Position numbers and translations under genes: made by a program. Below are positions 5,291 through 64,000 of a stretch of DNA of 64,000 bases, piece by piece. The notes under the pieces were generated by a model that saw only the letters and a list, made by a program, of their open reading frames with translations, was not told the DNA's origin and did not search any database. The DNA is from Octopus sinensis (Eukaryota): contig NC_043017.1 of the NCBI RefSeq assembly GCF_006345805.1, forward strand, positions 17,980,001 through 18,044,000, written 5' to 3'. How positions within the stretch are numbered: position 1 is the stretch's first letter; every line of letters begins with the position of its first letter.

Positions 5291-5661
5291 CGGATCTAAA
5301 CACTGTAACTTAGTGATGGTGGAGGGACAAACACAGATACATACATACAAGTGGTCGATGCCAATGCCATCTGACTGGTCCCATGCCAGTGGCATGTAAA
5401 AAGCACCATTCAAGCGTGGTCGTTGCCAGTGCCACCTGACTGGTGGCACCTGGTTGGTGGCACGTAAAAAGCACCATTTGAGCATGGTTGTTGCTGGTGG
5501 CATGTAAAAAGCACCCACTACACTCTCGGAGTGTAGAAACCTTGCCAGATCAGATTGGAGCCTGGTGCAGCCTCTTGGCTTGCCAGTCCTCAAACTGCCC
5601 AACCCATGCCAGCATAGAAAGCGGACGATAAGCGATGGTGATGATGATGATGAGGAGGAGG

Positions 5662-5700
<39 letters not shown>

Positions 5701-6314
5701 TGCATGACAGGCTTCTTTCAGTTTCCATCTACCAAAAATGCTCACAATGCTTTGGTCAGCCTGAGTATATAGAAGAAGACACTTGAACAAGGTGCCAGGC
5801 ATTGGGCCTGAACCCGGAACCATGTGGTTGGGAAGCAAGCTTCTTACCACACAGCCACAGAGACTTTTAGCCAACACCAAATGTGTAGGCAAATGTAAAT
5901 ACCTTGAGTTTATATACAACATCTCTCTAGATAAAGAATGAGACATCAACCAAATTAAGCTTCAGTCCTGAGTTAGCTTTTCATCAATGACCTAGTACCC
6001 TCATTAACTGGGGGACACTGCTTATAAACCCCCACTATTAGTAAGGAGTATCAAGGAATTGGTTGGACGACTTTACATACACACAACTCATTCTTGACAG
6101 TTATTTCAATTAATTAATTACTGATAACATAACAGTGTTCTTTTGTTTGCAAGACATCTAATCTACACAATGTATTAACAGATTTCTAACCATCATCCTT
6201 TATAGTAAACACATGTAAACATCTTATCTTTGTGAATAGTCAAGAGTTTACGCTGTCACAGATGAAATATAAACACAGGATTTAAAAACTAATCCTCATC
6301 TAATCTTCATATTA

Positions 6315-16629: not shown

Positions 16630-17020
16630 CTGCATATTAGAAACAAACTTCCCTGCCTCCCATAAGTATAATGAAATATTTTCTCGTAAAACAGTTAGAA
16701 TATCATACTCTACTCTTCCAAATATAAGTACCATAATAGCTAAACAATCATAATTCAACTTTTAGACTTAAACATAATGCAAGTTGCACAACACTATCTA
16801 ATAAAATTTGGAAGTTAAAAGGAAATAATATTAGATTTAGCCTTAAATGGGACATAGTAAGAAAGGCACAGCCTTATAAAAATAGTACGGATGGATGTGA
16901 ACTTTGCTCTATGGAGATATATAAAATTTTGAAACATAGGGATAATGTAAACTTATTAAATAACCGGTTTGAACTAGGAGTATCGTGCATTCATTGTACT
17001 ACCCATACCTTTAAATATTT
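16630..17020 (+). mobile_element. Penelope-like element GIY-YIG C-terminal remnant
   Basis: ISYSTLPNI..., LSNKIWKLK...WDIVRKAQPY...CELC...LLNNRFELGVSCIH. Confidence 0.78.
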
Positions 17021-47964: not shown

Positions 47965-50900
47965 CTGAAATAATAAGAAACAAATATTTTATGTGTGTGT
48001 ATATATTTATTTGTAAGGCAGGAAGCTCCACTAATTATTTCACATTTCCAATTTTTGGACCTAGTGAAGGTTGATGTGAGTCAAAGCTGCATATATACCT
48101 TGAACCAACATTCACTGCCATCAGAAACCTGACATTCAGAGTAACAATTATTACAGTTTCCAACACAATAAATAGGATAAAACTACCCAATATATATTTT
48201 CTCTTTCCTTCTTCATGCAATTCTTCTTACTATGTGTTATGAATTATAATATCCTATCATTAATTCCCTTCTTCAATAGTAAATAATAGATAAAAATATC
48301 ATCATCATCATCGTTTAACGTCCGCTTTCCATGCTAGCATGGTTCGACTGGGGTCTGGGAAGCCAGGAGGCTGCACCAGGCCCAGTCTGATCTGGCAGTG
48401 TTTCTACAGCTGGATGCCCTTCCTAACGCCAACTACTCCGTGAGTGTAGTGGGTGCTTTTTACGTGCTACCGGCACAGTGCCAGGCAAGGCTGGCAATGG
48501 CCACAATCGGTTGGTGCTTTTTACATGCCACCAGCACGGAGGCCAATCGGGGCGGCACTGGCAACAGCCACCGGCACTGGTATCACAACTTATAGATATC
48601 TTATTTTATATTGGGTACAAAAATGCAGCATAGTGTCAAATGATGTTGATATATGAATACTGTCTTTACTTAAAATAAAACAAGTCTTAATTGTTGAACA
48701 GCAGTGATTAATGGATTAGATGGCGAGCAGAAATAAAGTTTGAATAAAAGCCTTCTTTGAACTGGTTTATGACGAATTTTATTCAAACTTCATTCTAAAT
48801 GGATACCAAAGTGTTCGAGAAGACAACCCAACTGAGGAAGATTATATTTACTGGATGCTACACATCTACATATCAAAAGCAAAAGTTCCAGATGAATTTA
48901 AACTAGAGGTACTCTTAGTCCTCTGTGGGGCAAGGACCTCATCGTTAAAGAATCCAAAACCTTTGAGGCAGCAACAGAACACCTGGACTCAAAGTTCATA
49001 AAGAAAGGTTCAAACATAATGATGTGCCATAAGCTACGAACTCAAAAGTAAAAGAAAATTAGTGTATAGAAGGAATTATGTCAAACCCCTTTTTATCAGT
49101 AGCAATATACATAACAGAATGTAAAATCTCTCCTCTCATGGCTCATATGACAGCAGTTCAACAAATAGCCTCCCAGCATCTCACAAAATCTCTCTTCCAT
49201 ACTCATAATGCTTGTTTCATTAACATGCCTTTTTACTCAGAGAATGAGTACTAAGATCTTTCTCAAAAATTCAGTTCCAGGTAATAGATAAAGTCTACCA
49301 CATAAGAACAGGAACAGTCTTTCAGACAGGCTTCCACATAGTTTTCTCTTCTAAATTTTTCTGATAATTCTTTGGTCAATCTTAGATTGTATCTTAAAAG
49401 ACATTTGTCTAAGATGTTGTGCAGTGGAACTGAACCCAAAGCTACAATTTAGCAAAGAAAAAAATACACCAAAGTAAAGTATTTAGCTAAGAAAGAAAAA
49501 CATAAAGCTAAGAAATACTTCATATAATGGTATTACTTCTTACCTTCCATCACGTAATACCTTGAAACAATTTTTGACACTGAGGTCAACTACTGTTGAA
49601 CCTTGTCGTGACTCAACAGTACTCCCCAATGTACCACCATCACAGACAATGTCCAATTCAGGCCATAAGTTTTCAAATTCCTAGAAAACAATGAAAACTG
49701 TAGTTAGCAGAAAGAAATGTATGATATATATATATATATATATATATACAAATATACATACACACACACACAAATAAATATACATACATACATATATATA
49801 TATATATACACACACACACAAATAAATATACATATATACACATTTATGACAATCTCTATATATAAAGATGAGAATGTATATGTGTGTGTGTGTCTGTCTG
49901 TCTGTCTGAATCCCTAAAACTTGAGAACTACACAACCAATTTCATTCAAATTTTATATATGCCTTACTTAGGGTCCATGTAGTGTCATGGTCAAAAAAAT
50001 TTTAACTTCTTGCCTAGTGCGAGCCCACAGCAATATCATATCTTCACTATTTCTGTATTACATGTCAAAAATGAAACAATAACATCTCTCTATTGTAATG
50101 TCAGATGCTTTCACTTTAATACTGAAACTATTAAAGTGAAACTATTATATAAGAGGGATGAAATGTAAGTAGACATCCATTATGCTAGAAGATCTGCTAT
50201 GGTCTTACCACTAACAAAGGAATGATAAGACCATAGCGGATCTTCTTCTAGCATACATATATATATTTATATCTATGTGTTTATGTATTTGTAGATATAT
50301 GCATATATTTATGAATATGGGCATGCACGAGTTTTCTTGCACAAGATAATTACGAAAATAATCTATGGGGAACACAATTTCTTGCAAAAATCCAAGGCTA
50401 ATGCAAGGGAAATAACAATCAAAATATTCTTATAAGCTGCCTCTTGTAACCTGTGTATTTATTTTCAAACCCCATTCAGTCCAGTGAATCTCGTGTTTTC
50501 CTATCTGAAAGGGAGACAAGTACCTACACTTCCATGTGGCATACTTGAACAATTGCAAAGACCTCTTCACATGAAAGCATTGGTAGCTTTAAGACCCCAA
50601 AAAAGGAAGAAAGAAAATTAAGATTCATGTATATATAATTAATAGAAAATTTATAAATAAATGGGCAAGGGGCTTCTACTATAGCTTCAGGCCAACCAAA
50701 GCCTTGTGAGTGGATTTGGTTGACAGAAATTGAAAGAAGTTCATCATATTTGTATGACTGTGTGTGTGTGACTTTGCATCTGTGTCTGTTCCCCACACCA
50801 CTTTACAACCAGTGTTGGTGTGTTTAAGACCCTGTAACTTAGCAGCCTGGCAAAAGAGATCAATAGAATAAGTACCAGACTTTTAAAAAAGAGTATTGGG

Positions 50901-53256
50901 GTCGATTCATTTGATTAAAAAGAAGAAAATTGAAGGTGGTGCCCTAGTATGGTCACAGTCTAATGACTGAAACAATTAAAAAAATAAAAGATAACTATAT
51001 GTATATATATGAATAAAAAAATGGAGTTAACGCAGGTGTAATCAAATATTTTTACTTTCGACACATGTTTCGAAAATTCCACTGATACTATTCAAAAGAA
51101 TAAATGGTATAAACAATGCAATCTTCTCCTCAGGAAAGTGAAAAAAACGAAACTCGTCAATAAGACATTTTAGCAAAAAATGATGGATTTGTATAGCGAT
51201 AGACAGAACGCTATTAATATTGTTTAAAAAAACGTTATATGATATAACGTCATAAGTAGCTAACAGAAACAGTAGGGATATTAATAGTGAATGTTAAATA
51301 TAAAGGAAATTAAAGTTTAAATTATATATAATGATAGAGACTACTTATATGCACTAAATATATGTTTCTGCCAATGCTTACATCTGTATGCTCGCTGTAT
51401 AACCGTGTTTACTAGAGTATTTTTCGAAAAAATAATGAAAAATAGCTCAGAATTGCATATATGCACACACACACACACACTGAAAACAGTGTAGAGTTTA
51501 ATATTTATAATTTCATTGGCAATGGGGGTGACTCCTTCAAATAGTTTGAATAAGCCACTAATCAGTTAAACTTTGAAGTTAATGTCAATGAAATTATAAC
51601 ATATGTATACACACACACACACACACACAAAATAGGTGCTGTATGGGTTAATTAATTATGCGACTTTTCAAAGAATGATTTACAAATATTTTTTCTCTTC
51701 ATTACAGCTTTTCACCACCCAAAGAGTTTTCTGATTATATTAGAGTGGAATACTTCTCTGAGAATGCACACACATGTACAATATGAAAAATATGTCAAAG
51801 AATGTTTGAAACTTTACTTTTATGGACAATGGACTTTGTTGGTCACTTATGTTAGCACTTGTGAGGGCAATGGGTCCATCAACGGTCCGAGCCAAACCTC
51901 GTATGAATGAATGATCTGGAATACGTATACCAACATAATCTGTATCAGGATTCAAATACTCGTTCAGTTGTTGGGATCGCTGAAACACTAAGGTGACAGG
52001 TCCAGGAAGTAAATCATGTAAAAGTGAAATGGGGACAGTCACATTGCACCATCTGAAACAAAACAAAAAATAATGATAATAATTGTTTCTAATTTAGGCA
52101 CAAAGCCCAAGCAAATGAACAAGCATGGCCATAGCTCGTGAGCTTAAACTAGATGAAATGAAATGAAATGAAAAAAGCTTTTATGTGGCTGACTGATCTG
52201 CTAGAAACACCAGTAAAATATTCCTCAAATAACAACCATTTCCAAAGTAGAAGGATGCATTCAATAATGTAATCCAAGATAGAGTTTGACTAAATAAAAG
52301 GCAAGATGCTCAGGGACGGGATGCTTCTCTTCATCATCATCATGATGGGTTGGACGGTTCAACTGGGGTCTGGGAAGCCAGAAGGCTGCACCAGGCCCAG
52401 TCTGATCTGGCAGTGTTTCTATAGCTGGATGCCCTTCCTAACGCCAACCACTCCGTGAGTGTAGTGGGTGCTTTTTACGTGCCACTGGCACGGAGGCCAA
52501 TCGGACAGCGCTGGCTACGGCCACGTTCGGATGGTTCTCTTACGTGCCACCGGCACTGGTATCAGATTACAATTTTGATTTTCACTTGCCTCAACAGGTC
52601 TTCACAAGTGGAGTTTTGTGTCCCAAGAAGGAAAGGAATGCATAAGTGGGCTGGCTACATCCAGGTGTAGGCCACAGGATTATGGCCTCACTTGTCCTGC
52701 TGGGTCTTCTCACGCACAGCATACTTCCATAGGTCTCGGTCTCTCGTCATTTCCTCGGTGAGACCTAAAGTTTGAAGGTCGTGCTTCACCACCTCGTCCC
52801 AGGTTTTCCTGGGTCTACCTCTTCCACAGGTTCCCTCAACCGCTAGGGTGTGGCACTTTTTCATACAACTATCTTCATCCATTCTCGCCACATGACCATA
52901 CCAGCGCAAACGTCTCTCTTGCACACCACAACTGAGACAAACCAAATGACTGATAAAAAGAATTCTTACTTGGAAATATCTTTGACATCAGCAATGCTAA
53001 TGGCAATAGGTTTCAATGGATTCCGCTTCTTTATCTTGTATATACTGTCAACAGCATCCTTATTTTGGGCAAGACAAGCAATGCCATAGATAGTGTCAGT
53101 GGGAACAGCAATCACACCTCCAGACAGCAATTTCTTGGCAGTAATAGTTATTTGAGGTTTCAGGTCTAGAAATATAAGAAAAAAACTTTGCAACTAAAGG
53201 GTTCGAAACTTCTTGAACAAGAATTATAAGCCAGTGAGGAAGCCTCTACACAGATG

Positions 53257-63419: not shown

Positions 63420-64000
63420 TTATGTAAGAATATTGACCACAGCAGCGGTTTTCAAACATTTTATATTGAACTGGAGATCAAAATTACTGTTGAACTTTGC
63501 CAGGATGTGACAGTAAATGGAAGGCATCAAGAACAGAGCGCTGGTGGTTCCCAGGTACAAACAGTCTGGGAGAACCAGTAGCTGTGTCACAAAGAATGGT
63601 GCCTTCAGCAGTCGGAAGTGGGAGATAGGCAAACTTGCAACAGGACAACTTGGTAGAAGCTAAATCCAAAGTGTCCAGAGCTGGCTGATCCTGCACAATG
63701 GCAGTTAAATCGATTGCAGCAGGAGATGAAAGGGAGCACACAAGAAGACGAGAGAGTGCGTCAGCAGGCATGTACTCTGTTCCAGCTATGTGCCGAATGT
63801 CACTTGTGAACTGGGAAATGTAGTCCAGGTGATGAAAAGCATGAGGCGAGTGTATGTCCGATTTAGATGACAGAGCAAACATAAGAGGCTTGTGATCAGT
63901 ATAAATCACAAAATCTCGGCCCTCAAATTGATGTTGAAAATGCCGAACTGACAGGTAGATCTGTCAGAAACCTGTAATCAATAATGATACTGTGCACCAA
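63420..64000 (-). mobile_element. Ty3/Gypsy RNase H to integrase-linker fragment in CDK5RAP1 intron 5
   Basis: IYTDHKPL...ISQFTSDIRHIAG...ADALSR (ORF 63484..63909). Confidence 0.92.

What the first reader, a model, noticed from the sequence alone, without database searches (positions are those of the whole stretch)
51054..51139. Hammerhead ribozyme with an intact core, in sense orientation in YRDC intron 3
Seen in sequence: the minus strand, which is the YRDC transcript strand, has a type I hammerhead with every core nucleotide (C3 U4 G5 A6 G7 G8 A9; G12 A13 A14 A15.1; G-U-C17). Stem I is a perfect ACUUUC/GAAAGU. Stem II is unusually long: GAAGAUU/AAUUUUC, then CAUUG/CAGUG, AUAC/GUAU and a terminal UAUUC-UUUU-GAAUA hairpin. 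Stem III is minimal (AC-AUGU-GU). The predicted cleavage is after 51060. Established knowledge: Penelope-like elements carry minimal type I hammerheads, often thought to act as dimers. Inference: the nested pairing suggests a young or selected motif. If active, it would cut the YRDC pre-mRNA co-transcriptionally and could modulate expression of an essential t6A enzyme.
Basis: partly seen in the sequence, partly recalled or inferred. Interest (0 to 1): 0.78.

Follow-up and report, generated by a model that had tools for sequence, protein, structure and literature searches.

The report
Retrotransposon-borne hammerhead in a YRDC intron
The hammerhead ribozyme fold is real. It is the tail-end ribozyme of a young, 5'-truncated Penelope-like retrotransposon copy, one of more than a thousand in this genome, that landed in an intron of a YrdC-family gene, and nothing suggests it regulates that gene.

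Summary
Observation confirmed. Window 51054-51139 (minus) has a complete type I hammerhead: 6-bp helix I, CUGAGGA, a 55-nt helix II, GAAA, a 2-bp helix III with an AUGU loop, and C17 at 51060. A descriptor scan finds only this site, and none in 200 shuffles. A covariance model built only from other hammerheads of this genome finds only this site (30.1 bits, E about 1e-6). Rfam's own models miss it.

It is not a locus-specific element. It lies in a 462-nt repeat (50996-51457): the last 38 codons plus the 3' UTR of a Penelope-like element (PLE), ending in a TA-rich tail. At least 41 copies are identical over 111 nt. About 320 copies carry this exact core pattern, and about 1,400 more belong to sister subfamilies. 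Copies show variable 5' truncation, head-to-head inverted pairs and repeat-ORF-repeat units.

Across subfamilies, helices I and II covary strongly, so the fold is selected in the PLE lineage. Individual copies decay neutrally.

The copy does sit in sense orientation in an intron of a YrdC-domain gene. It has no partner hammerhead in the window and no sign of exaptation. This is an ordinary transposon passenger. The modest novelty is a conserved, unusually long helix II.

The parts
50996..51457 (-). 5'-truncated copy of a Penelope-like retrotransposon: the last 38 codons of its RT-endonuclease ORF plus the whole 3' UTR
   Evidence: BLAST against 30 genomic copies shows a common 3' end at 50996-51007 and variable 5' ends at 51150-51457, at 95-99.6% identity. 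Longer copies continue upstream into the ORF.
51341..51457 (-). Remnant of the PLE ORF: 38 codons and a TAG stop, the C-terminal end of the GIY-YIG-type endonuclease domain
   Evidence: The translation aligns to residues 670-705 of the 709-aa PLE protein P0005 (E 0.004). The same region of a longer copy matches P0004 655-700 (E 7e-5).
51054..51139 (-). Type I hammerhead ribozyme motif, starting 201 nt after the ORF stop and ending 57 nt before the element's 3' end
   Evidence: Sequence read; descriptor scan with 1 hit versus 0 in 200 shuffles; independent CM R1 at 30.1 bits, E 1.4e-6.
51072..51126 (-). Extended helix II (55 nt): a 7-bp base, a 5-bp and a 4-bp segment, and a terminal hairpin
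   Evidence: Folds alone at -14.6 kcal/mol. Nine of its 12 proximal pairs show changes on both sides among 22 subfamily representatives.
51059..51060 (-). Predicted scissile bond (after C17 = 51060)
   Evidence: Position follows from the core numbering. Cleavage was not tested.
51061..51068 (-). Helix III segment ACAUGUGU. It is self-complementary (8 pairs including 2 G-U), so two copies could form an extended helix III
   Evidence: Direct reading of the sequence. Co-folding two copies gives -46.6 kcal/mol against 2 x -18.1. This segment is shared with the short hammerheads of this genome.
50996..51010 (-). TA-rich 3' tail at the junction with the target. CATATA occurs at both junctions and may be a short target-site duplication
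   Evidence: Most solo copies end in ATTCATAT followed by (TA)n. The window's flanks were read.
51818..52052 (-). YrdC/Sua5-domain exon upstream of the intron that holds the insertion
   Evidence: Pfam PF01300, E 4.5e-16, profile 74-143. AG acceptor and GT donor read.
52970..53165 (-). YrdC/Sua5-domain exon (profile positions 5-56)
   Evidence: Pfam PF01300, E 4.8e-17. Splice sites read.
49544..49680 (-). Downstream exon that closes the intron, carrying the C-terminal YrdC-domain motif GSTVVDL
   Evidence: Open frame with that motif and canonical splice sites. This 46-aa piece alone gave no Pfam hit.

Best explanation
The motif is the 3'-UTR hammerhead of a recently active Penelope-like retrotransposon (PLE) with a C-terminal endonuclease. 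The window holds a dead-on-arrival, 5'-truncated copy: the last 38 codons, the 3' UTR and a TA-rich tail. It inserted at a TG/TA microsatellite inside an intron of a YrdC-family gene, and happens to lie in the sense direction.

Shown here: membership in a repeat family, the architecture of the element, and covariation of the hammerhead helices among subfamilies.

Inferred for the parent element: the hammerhead acts on tandem or read-through PLE transcripts. It probably acts as a dimer, through the self-complementary helix III, when two copies lie on one RNA. It would cut 57 nt upstream of the unit's 3' end and release unit-length RNA with 5'-OH and 2',3'-cyclic-phosphate ends. The conserved long helix II may also serve as a structured handle for the element's reverse transcriptase.

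Inferred for this locus: the single intronic copy is a passenger with little or no self-cleavage and no role in YRDC expression.
For: Repeat family. The 111-nt region has 1321 first-look candidates in the genome, and 41 of 43 scored are 100% identical. The pattern CTGAGGA-N30-60-GAAACATGTGT occurs 322 times (reversed control 1), and the A7 sister pattern 1406 times (control 0).

Retroelement behaviour. Copies share a 3' end and have scattered 5' ends. Most solo copies end in (TA)n. Head-to-head inverted pairs joined at their truncated 5' ends occur at several loci.

PLE identity. At two loci the repeat flanks an ORF of about 660 aa with a period of about 2.87 kb, as repeat-ORF-repeat. The ORF carries the PLE-type motifs DKT-G, RLI-PS, FDISNFY, PMGSS and YRDD. 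Its homologues are 709-727-aa proteins with an RT plus a Cys-rich linker and a GIY-YIG-type endonuclease. The endonuclease C-terminus is encoded in the first 140 nt or so of the repeat and in the window copy. Copies with uninterrupted frames of 700-865 aa exist at 95% identity. This layout matches the published one: pseudo-LTRs, inverted 5'-truncated partners, hammerheads near the 3' end and (TA)n targets (PMC8557442, PMC4209133).

Selection on the fold in the lineage. In 22 representatives of several subfamilies, 86.7% of cells pair against 73.4% when shuffled (0/500). Fourteen of 20 pairs change on both sides (2/500). Slid controls pair at only 29-47%. The comparison with short-helix-II hammerheads gives the same result.

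No selection on dispersed copies. In 10 copies chosen without regard to the hammerhead, 4 have core-disrupting changes. Core diversity is 11%, and the hammerhead window is no outlier.

No partner motif in the window.
Against: Self-cleavage, transcription and any effect on splicing are untested. Pfam did not recognise the RT of the two ORF copies I read, so the PLE assignment rests on motifs and on homologues whose own GIY-YIG and RVT_1 Pfam hits fall below Pfam's cut-offs. Those two ORF copies are broken before the endonuclease. The PLE clade (Neptune-like or other) was not determined by phylogeny. The target-site duplication is ambiguous because the target is TA-rich. A 2-bp helix III with a tetraloop is more stable than in the most minimal PLE motifs, so some monomer activity cannot be excluded. 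I could not check whether the insertion is present at the orthologous intron in other octopus species.
Confidence: 0.88

Rival explanations
1. An active intronic ribozyme that cleaves YRDC pre-mRNA co-transcriptionally and modulates expression of the t6A enzyme.
For: The core is fully intact and the motif lies on the transcribed strand within an intron. Conserved intronic hammerheads exist in amniotes (cited in PMC7229834). A vertebrate survey reports that hammerhead-bearing PLE derivatives are depleted from introns, which suggests such insertions can matter (bioRxiv 10.64898/2026.07.22.740005).
Against: The copy is indistinguishable from at least 41 others, so its intactness reflects youth. 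There is no second motif in 64 kb to form a dimer. Metazoan PLE hammerheads showed no detectable monomer cleavage and only low dimer cleavage in vitro (PMC4209133). In Anolis, RNA-seq showed no ends at the PLE hammerhead site (PMC11167929). A cut inside an intron need not change mRNA output.
Confidence: 0.05
2. A unit of a non-autonomous 'non-LTR retrozyme': a short ORF-less tandem repeat expressed as a self-cleaving circular RNA, rather than a fragment of an autonomous PLE.
For: Many copies lack the ORF. One locus holds an ORF-less 1.1-kb unit duplicated in tandem at 98.9% identity (L071). Retrozymes are proposed to derive from PLE pseudo-LTRs (bioRxiv 10.64898/2026.07.22.740005; PMC7229834).
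Against: The window copy is single, not tandem. It begins inside the endonuclease coding sequence. 5' ends are scattered, as expected from truncation. ORF-bearing units carry the same repeat.
Confidence: 0.05
3. The conserved hammerhead-like fold, especially the long helix II, serves mainly as a protein-binding or priming structure for the PLE reverse transcriptase, and self-cleavage is dispensable. This is a rival for the family-level mechanism, not for what the window copy is.
For: The length (52-58 nt) and pairing of helix II are kept across subfamilies with different sequences. In vitro, hammerhead catalytic mutants did not affect PLE insertion, and reverse transcription starts internally near the 3' end (PMC11167929).
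Against: All catalytic core nucleotides are kept in every subfamily, although the search pattern itself required them. Core conservation is hard to explain by binding alone. PLE hammerheads from fungi cleave well (PMC4209133).
Confidence: 0.25
4. A chance match to the hammerhead consensus in AT-rich intronic DNA.
For: The fold energy is not unusual for the composition (z = -1.45), and Rfam reports no hit.
Against: There were 0 descriptor hits in 200 shuffles. The independent CM gives E 1.4e-6. There are hundreds of copies against reversed-pattern controls of 0-1, and the helices covary.
Confidence: 0.01

Closest known systems
Minimal type I hammerheads in the pseudo-LTRs of Penelope-like elements (Cervera and de la Pena 2014, PMC4209133)
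   Same: Type I topology and a canonical core. A G10.1-C11.1 pair. A short helix III (2 bp) with a palindromic segment that suggests dimer action. A position near the 3' end, within the repeated flank of a PLE. Hundreds to thousands of mostly solitary copies from truncated elements. Pairs on opposite strands 100-700 bp apart.
   Different: Helix II is 55 nt, not 6-8 bp with a small loop. Helix I is a full 6 bp. [quoted passage not shown] Rfam models miss it entirely.
Drosophila virilis Penelope hammerhead (same paper)
   Same: A young invading family with nearly identical copies (97 of 130 identical there; at least 41 identical here). [quoted passage not shown] It escaped the standard descriptor.
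   Different: The D. virilis motif has a 2-bp helix I that overlaps an intron end and a 6-bp helix II with one bulge.
Naiad/Chlamys PLE 'HHR_half_core' cases and (TA)n targeting (Craig et al. 2021, PMC8557442)
   Same: The two halves of the core are separated by 35-50 nt. Insertion favours (TA)n microsatellites. Insertions form complex tandem and inverted structures.
   Different: Naiads carry the endonuclease at the N-terminus and were reported to lack canonical hammerheads. Here the endonuclease is C-terminal and the three helices are complete and covarying.
Metazoan non-LTR retrozymes with type I hammerheads (PMC7229834; bioRxiv 10.64898/2026.07.22.740005)
   Same: Type I hammerhead, a 2-bp helix III with a tetraloop as in invertebrate motifs, AT-rich non-coding carrier, and a likely PLE origin.
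   Different: Retrozymes are short tandem arrays without an ORF, expressed as circles. The window copy is a solitary 5'-truncated PLE end that starts inside coding sequence.
Conserved intronic hammerheads of amniotes (HH9, HH10)
   Same: A hammerhead in sense orientation inside an intron of a protein-coding gene.
   Different: Those are single-copy and conserved at orthologous positions, and Rfam recognises them. This one is a multi-copy transposon fragment with no Rfam HH9/HH10 match at this site.

Membership tests
Hammerhead ribozyme, type I | Conserved core: C3 U4 G5 A6 N7 G8 A9, G12 A13 A14, A15.1-U16.1, H17 | tested here: met
   All are present at 51133-51127, 51071-51068, 51061 and 51060, with N7 = G and H17 = C (descriptor).
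Hammerhead ribozyme, type I | Three helices around the core with helix I open, supported by compensatory changes | tested here: met
   Helix I: 5 of 6 pairs change on both sides. Helix II: 9 of 12. Overall 86.7% of cells pair against 73.4% shuffled (0/500). Helix III was fixed by the search pattern, so it is uninformative.
Hammerhead ribozyme, type I | Match to a curated hammerhead covariance model above its threshold | tested here: not met
   There is no Rfam hammerhead hit at gathering score or at E <= 10. A model built from Rfam-detected hammerheads of this genome does match (30.1 bits, E 1.4e-6) once a 51-nt insertion in helix II is allowed.
Hammerhead ribozyme, type I | Mg-dependent self-cleavage after position 17 | not testable with these tools
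   This needs in vitro transcription or RNA end mapping.
Hammerhead ribozyme, type I | Tertiary contact between helix I and helix II loops, needed for fast cleavage at physiological Mg | not tested
   No recognisable loop-loop motif. Helix I could extend past a C-A mismatch and helix II has a G-G mismatch after 7 bp, but this rests only on reading the sequence.
Penelope-like element (endonuclease-positive) | Single ORF with a PLE-type reverse transcriptase | tested here: inconclusive
   PLE-like motifs are visible in the ORF next to the repeat. Homologues are RT-EN proteins of 709-727 aa. Pfam gave no hit on the two copies read and only a sub-threshold RVT_1 hit on a homologue.
Penelope-like element (endonuclease-positive) | GIY-YIG endonuclease joined to the RT | tested here: inconclusive
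   The homologue P0003 hits PF01541 at 18.6 bits, below the 22.6 cut-off. The Cys-rich linker and the C-terminal endonuclease segment align to the repeat and to the window copy (E 7e-5 and 0.004). The catalytic GIY/YIG residues of this family were not examined.
Penelope-like element (endonuclease-positive) | Pseudo-LTRs from partial tandems, and inverted 5'-truncated partner copies | tested here: met
   Repeat-ORF-repeat with a 2865-nt period at L070 and the same arrangement at L072. Head-to-head pairs at L029/L030, L006, L017, L024 and L001/L002.
Penelope-like element (endonuclease-positive) | Hammerhead motif inside the repeated flank near the 3' end | tested here: met
   The hammerhead ends 57 nt before the (TA)n junction and starts 201 nt after the ORF stop.
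Non-LTR retrozyme | Short ORF-less unit in head-to-tail tandem arrays, one hammerhead per unit | tested here: not met
   The window has one copy only, and it begins in coding sequence. One ORF-less tandem was seen elsewhere (L071).
Conserved intronic hammerhead (HH9/HH10 type) | Single-copy motif conserved at the orthologous intron across species | tested here: not met
   It is multi-copy: at least 41 identical copies and 322 pattern matches. Orthologous conservation could not be examined because no other cephalopod genome can be searched by DNA here.

The most novel reading that the evidence does not exclude
Octopod Penelope-like elements carry a distinct structural class of hammerhead. Helix II is a conserved module of about 55 nt whose pairing is kept by covariation. 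In this genome this class outnumbers the short-helix-II form about 8 to 1 among motifs that share the same helix III. Standard Rfam models do not detect it. The module could be a docking platform for the element's reverse transcriptase, or a switch that couples ribozyme folding to retrotransposition. If so, searches with the Rfam models would undercount PLE hammerheads.
Probability: 0.3. Interest if true: 0.45.

Novelty: new variant of a known kind. Interest (0 to 1): 0.25.

Why it matters
For the locus itself it matters little. This is one more transposon fragment in an intron, and the proposed link to t6A biology has no support.

For ribozyme and transposon biology there are two modest points. 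First, a whole class of PLE hammerheads escapes the Rfam models only because helix II is long. I counted about 1,700 motifs in this genome with intact cores. Genome surveys that rely on the Rfam models may therefore undercount them. Second, the long helix II keeps its length and pairing across subfamilies that differ in sequence. That is the signature of a functional RNA module, and it gives a concrete handle on the unresolved question of what hammerheads do for PLEs.

Tried and rejected
1. Rfam scans found no hammerhead in the window, at gathering score on the whole window or at E <= 10 on 801 nt. A weak snR75 C/D-box hit (20 bits against a gathering score of 40) overlaps the motif and was treated as chance.
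2. A SINE was rejected: no small-RNA head was found, and the repeat continues into an ORF.
3. A MITE or DNA transposon with long terminal inverted repeats, suggested by the inverted pairs, was rejected. Most copies are single, with scattered truncation on one side only and a (TA)n tail on the other.
4. The most abundant GIY-YIG-bearing 781-aa ORFs are not the partner element. Their 3' flanks (L065-L067) share nothing with the repeat and gave no hammerhead hit.
5. Single related elements from Octopus bimaculoides (L073) and Argonauta hians (L074) were read. Both have hammerhead-like remnants with the same helix III segment and a long spacer, but with broken cores or stems, so they were not used for covariation.
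6. Contig C8223 was checked as a possible alternative haplotype that might show the empty site. It has no DNA similarity to the window.
8. The RNAalifold consensus recovered only the base of helix II, so the named structure was counted explicitly.
Intact-length ORFs are reported only as existing.
Full report
**1. The observation**

The minus strand of window 51054-51139 reads as a complete type I hammerhead:
- Helix I: ACUUUC with GAAAGU.
- Core: CUGAGGA.
- Helix II: 55 nt, opening with G10.1 and closing with C11.1.
- G12 A13 A14 A15.1, then C15.2, an AUGU loop, G16.2 and U16.1.

The thermodynamic fold reproduces helices I and II, but its energy is ordinary for this AT-rich composition (-18.9 kcal/mol, z = -1.45). 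Energy alone therefore proves nothing.

Two other tests show it is not chance:
- A hammerhead descriptor required the core, helix I of at least 5 bp, helix II of at least 4 bp, and the GAAA box within 80 nt of the CUGANGA box. It finds this one site in the window on either strand, and no site in 200 dinucleotide-preserving shuffles.
- Rfam reports nothing at gathering thresholds and no hammerhead at E <= 10 in an 801-nt search. I built covariance model R1 from five other hammerheads of the same genome that Rfam RF00163 does detect. R1 gives a single hit in the 64-kb window, exactly 51054-51139 minus. The hit scores 30.1 bits (E about 1.4e-6) and covers the full model, with a 51-nt insertion in helix II.

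Rfam's miss is therefore explained by the long helix II.

**2. It is part of a repeat**

- The 111 nt around the motif have 1321 first-look candidates in the 2.72-Gb genome. Of 43 scored, 41 are 100% identical.
- Comparison with 30 of these loci defines a 462-nt repeat in the window, 50996-51457. Copies share a 3' end at 50996-51007, and their 5' ends scatter between 51150 and 51457. Identity to the window copy is 95-99.6%.
- Most solitary copies end in ATTCATAT followed by (TA)n. Others run on into a further shared sequence.
- Several loci hold two copies head to head, joined at their truncated 5' ends: L029/L030, L006, L017, L024 and L001/L002.
- The window copy is flanked by (TG)n-CATATA upstream and ends in ATATATATACATATA. 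It therefore sits in a microsatellite, with a possible 6-bp CATATA duplication.

**3. The repeat is the end of a Penelope-like element**

- At two loci, L070 and L072, the repeat lies on both sides of an ORF of about 660 aa. The ATG is about 50 nt after the repeat, and the period is about 2.87 kb.
- The ORF shows RT motifs in the order seen in PLEs: DKT-G, RLI-PS, FDISNFY, PMGSS, YRDD.
- Pfam finds nothing in these two copies. The large protein database returns homologues from Octopus bimaculoides, O. sinensis and Argonauta hians, plus two full-length proteins of 709 and 727 aa. Those two carry an RT, a Cys-rich linker and a GIY-YIG-type endonuclease. Their GIY-YIG and RVT_1 Pfam hits fall below Pfam's cut-offs.
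- The C-terminal endonuclease segment of these proteins aligns to the first 140 nt or so of the longer repeat copies (E 7e-5).
- The window copy opens in that same reading frame. It has 38 codons and a TAG stop (51457-51341), which align to residues 670-705 of the 709-aa protein.
- The two ORF copies I read are broken before the endonuclease. The family also has copies with uninterrupted frames of 700-865 aa at 95% identity.

The window therefore holds the last 38 codons, a 345-nt 3' UTR and the TA-rich tail of a 5'-truncated PLE. The hammerhead starts 201 nt after the stop codon and ends 57 nt before the 3' junction.

This is the published PLE layout: pseudo-LTRs from partial tandems, an inverted 5'-truncated partner, a hammerhead near the 3' end, and (TA)n targets in some clades (PMC8557442, PMC4209133). 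PLEs are abundant in this genome, with 4846 first-look GIY-YIG candidates and 17387 for this RT.

The assembly statistics suggest the genome is Octopus sinensis. So does the fact that the O. sinensis homologue is withheld from look-up. This is an inference, not a test.

**4. Selection acts in the transposon lineage, not at this locus**

Whole-genome pattern counts:

| Pattern | Hits | Reversed control |
|---|---|---|
| CTGAGGA-N30-60-GAAACATGTGT (window type) | 322 | 1 |
| CTGAAGA-N30-60-GAAACATGTGT (A7 sister type) | 1406 | 0 |
| CTGANGA-N8-29-GAAACATGTGT (short helix II) | 203 | 8 |

- The A7 set contains several subfamilies. Their helix II sequences differ, but the lengths stay at 52-58 nt.
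- I aligned 22 representatives, chosen for diversity from the first chromosome, plus the window copy and two variants. On that alignment 86.7% of cells form standard pairs, against 73.4 +/- 1.2% in column shuffles (0 of 500 reach the observed value).
- Fourteen of 20 pairs change on both sides (2 of 500). The covariation score is 0.41 against 0.20. Sliding the partners by 1-3 columns drops pairing to 29-47%.
- Helix I has 5 of 6 pairs with double changes, for example ACUUUC/GAAAGU, ACUUCC/GGAAGU and AUUUUC/GAAAAU. The proximal 12 pairs of helix II have 9.
- A smaller comparison with the short hammerheads, which share the same helix III and a similar 3' tail, gives the same picture.
- Helix III and the core were fixed by the search patterns and so carry no information.

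Dispersed copies behave differently. I took ten copies selected through a different part of the element. Four have core-disrupting changes. Pairwise diversity at core positions is 11%. The hammerhead stretch is not an outlier among 86-nt windows, at 4.2% within a range of 3.7-8.9%.

The intact core in the window therefore reflects a young insertion, not local constraint.

**5. How it most likely works**

For the parent element, I infer the published model (PMC4209133):
- Transcripts that run through a tandem or pseudo-LTR arrangement carry two hammerheads.
- The helix III segment ACAUGUGU is self-complementary (8 pairs, two of them G-U), so two motifs can form an extended helix III. Co-folding two copies gives -46.6 kcal/mol against 2 x -18.1.
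- Cleavage after C17 would release unit-length RNA with 5'-OH and cyclic-phosphate ends.

How much this matters for transposition is open. In the one PLE studied biochemically, hammerhead mutants did not impair insertion in vitro, and RNA-seq showed no ends at the cleavage site (PMC11167929). [quoted passage not shown] I give that alternative about one chance in four.

**6. The host gene**

- PF01300 (Sua5/YciO/YrdC) matches two minus-strand exons, 53165-52970 and 52052-51818.
- A third exon, 49680-49544, carries the C-terminal GSTVVDL motif.
- All three have AG/GT boundaries and consistent phases.

The PLE fragment lies in the 2137-nt intron between the second and third of these exons, on the transcribed strand. 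The name 'intron 3' is plausible but depends on an upstream exon I did not locate.

Nothing indicates a role in YRDC expression:
- The window has no second hammerhead.
- The copy is one of hundreds.
- Metazoan PLE hammerheads are poor monomeric cleavers (PMC4209133).
- A vertebrate survey reports depletion of related elements from introns (bioRxiv 10.64898/2026.07.22.740005). At most, this suggests that such insertions can be mildly harmful.

**7. Verdict**

This is an ordinary passenger fragment of a young PLE. The only element of novelty is at family level. It is a PLE hammerhead class with a conserved helix II of about 55 nt, maintained by covariation. This class dominates in this genome, and Rfam's hammerhead models miss the one copy that was scanned with them.

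Noticed in passing
window 16634-17018 (+): Fragment of another Penelope-like element ORF (linker and endonuclease part). It matches P0003 residues 387-596 by tblastn (E 1.8e-12). Model R1 finds no hammerhead nearby.
   Followed up: partly
window 63487-63963 (-): A 159-aa open frame whose translation looks like the pol region of an LTR retrotransposon.
   Followed up: no
G000 C15:31242370-31242813 (-) and C8223:287971-288385 (+): Two further loci with the Sua5/YrdC domain. The C15 copy is one 185-aa open frame, only 30-34% identical to the window's exons. The C8223 copy shares no DNA similarity with the window. Which locus is the true YRDC orthologue was not settled.
   Followed up: partly
L071 (G000 C2:89072500-89076000): An ORF-less 1130-bp unit, made of a PLE end plus an inverted 170-bp piece that carries a second hammerhead. 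It is duplicated in tandem at 98.9% identity with a period of 1086 bp. The arrangement resembles a retrozyme and could yield unit-length or circular RNA.
   Followed up: no
window 51090-51173 (-): Weak Rfam hit to the C/D-box snoRNA family snR75 (20.2 bits, gathering 40, E 0.09), overlapping the hammerhead. Taken as a chance match in AT-rich sequence.
   Followed up: no
L074 6893-6995 (+) (Argonauta hians) and L073 about 5640-5740 (+) (Octopus bimaculoides): Related PLE copies in other octopods carry hammerhead-like remnants downstream of the ORF. These have the same GAAACAUGUGU or GAAACAUAUGU segment and a spacer of about 60 nt, but the single copies read have degraded cores or stems. The long-helix-II class may therefore predate the split of these genera.
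   Followed up: partly
G000, several chromosomes: A further hammerhead family has a GC-richer long helix II (GCACUGGUGG ... CCACCAGSGC) and one extra nucleotide after A9. It shares the same helix III segment.
   Followed up: no
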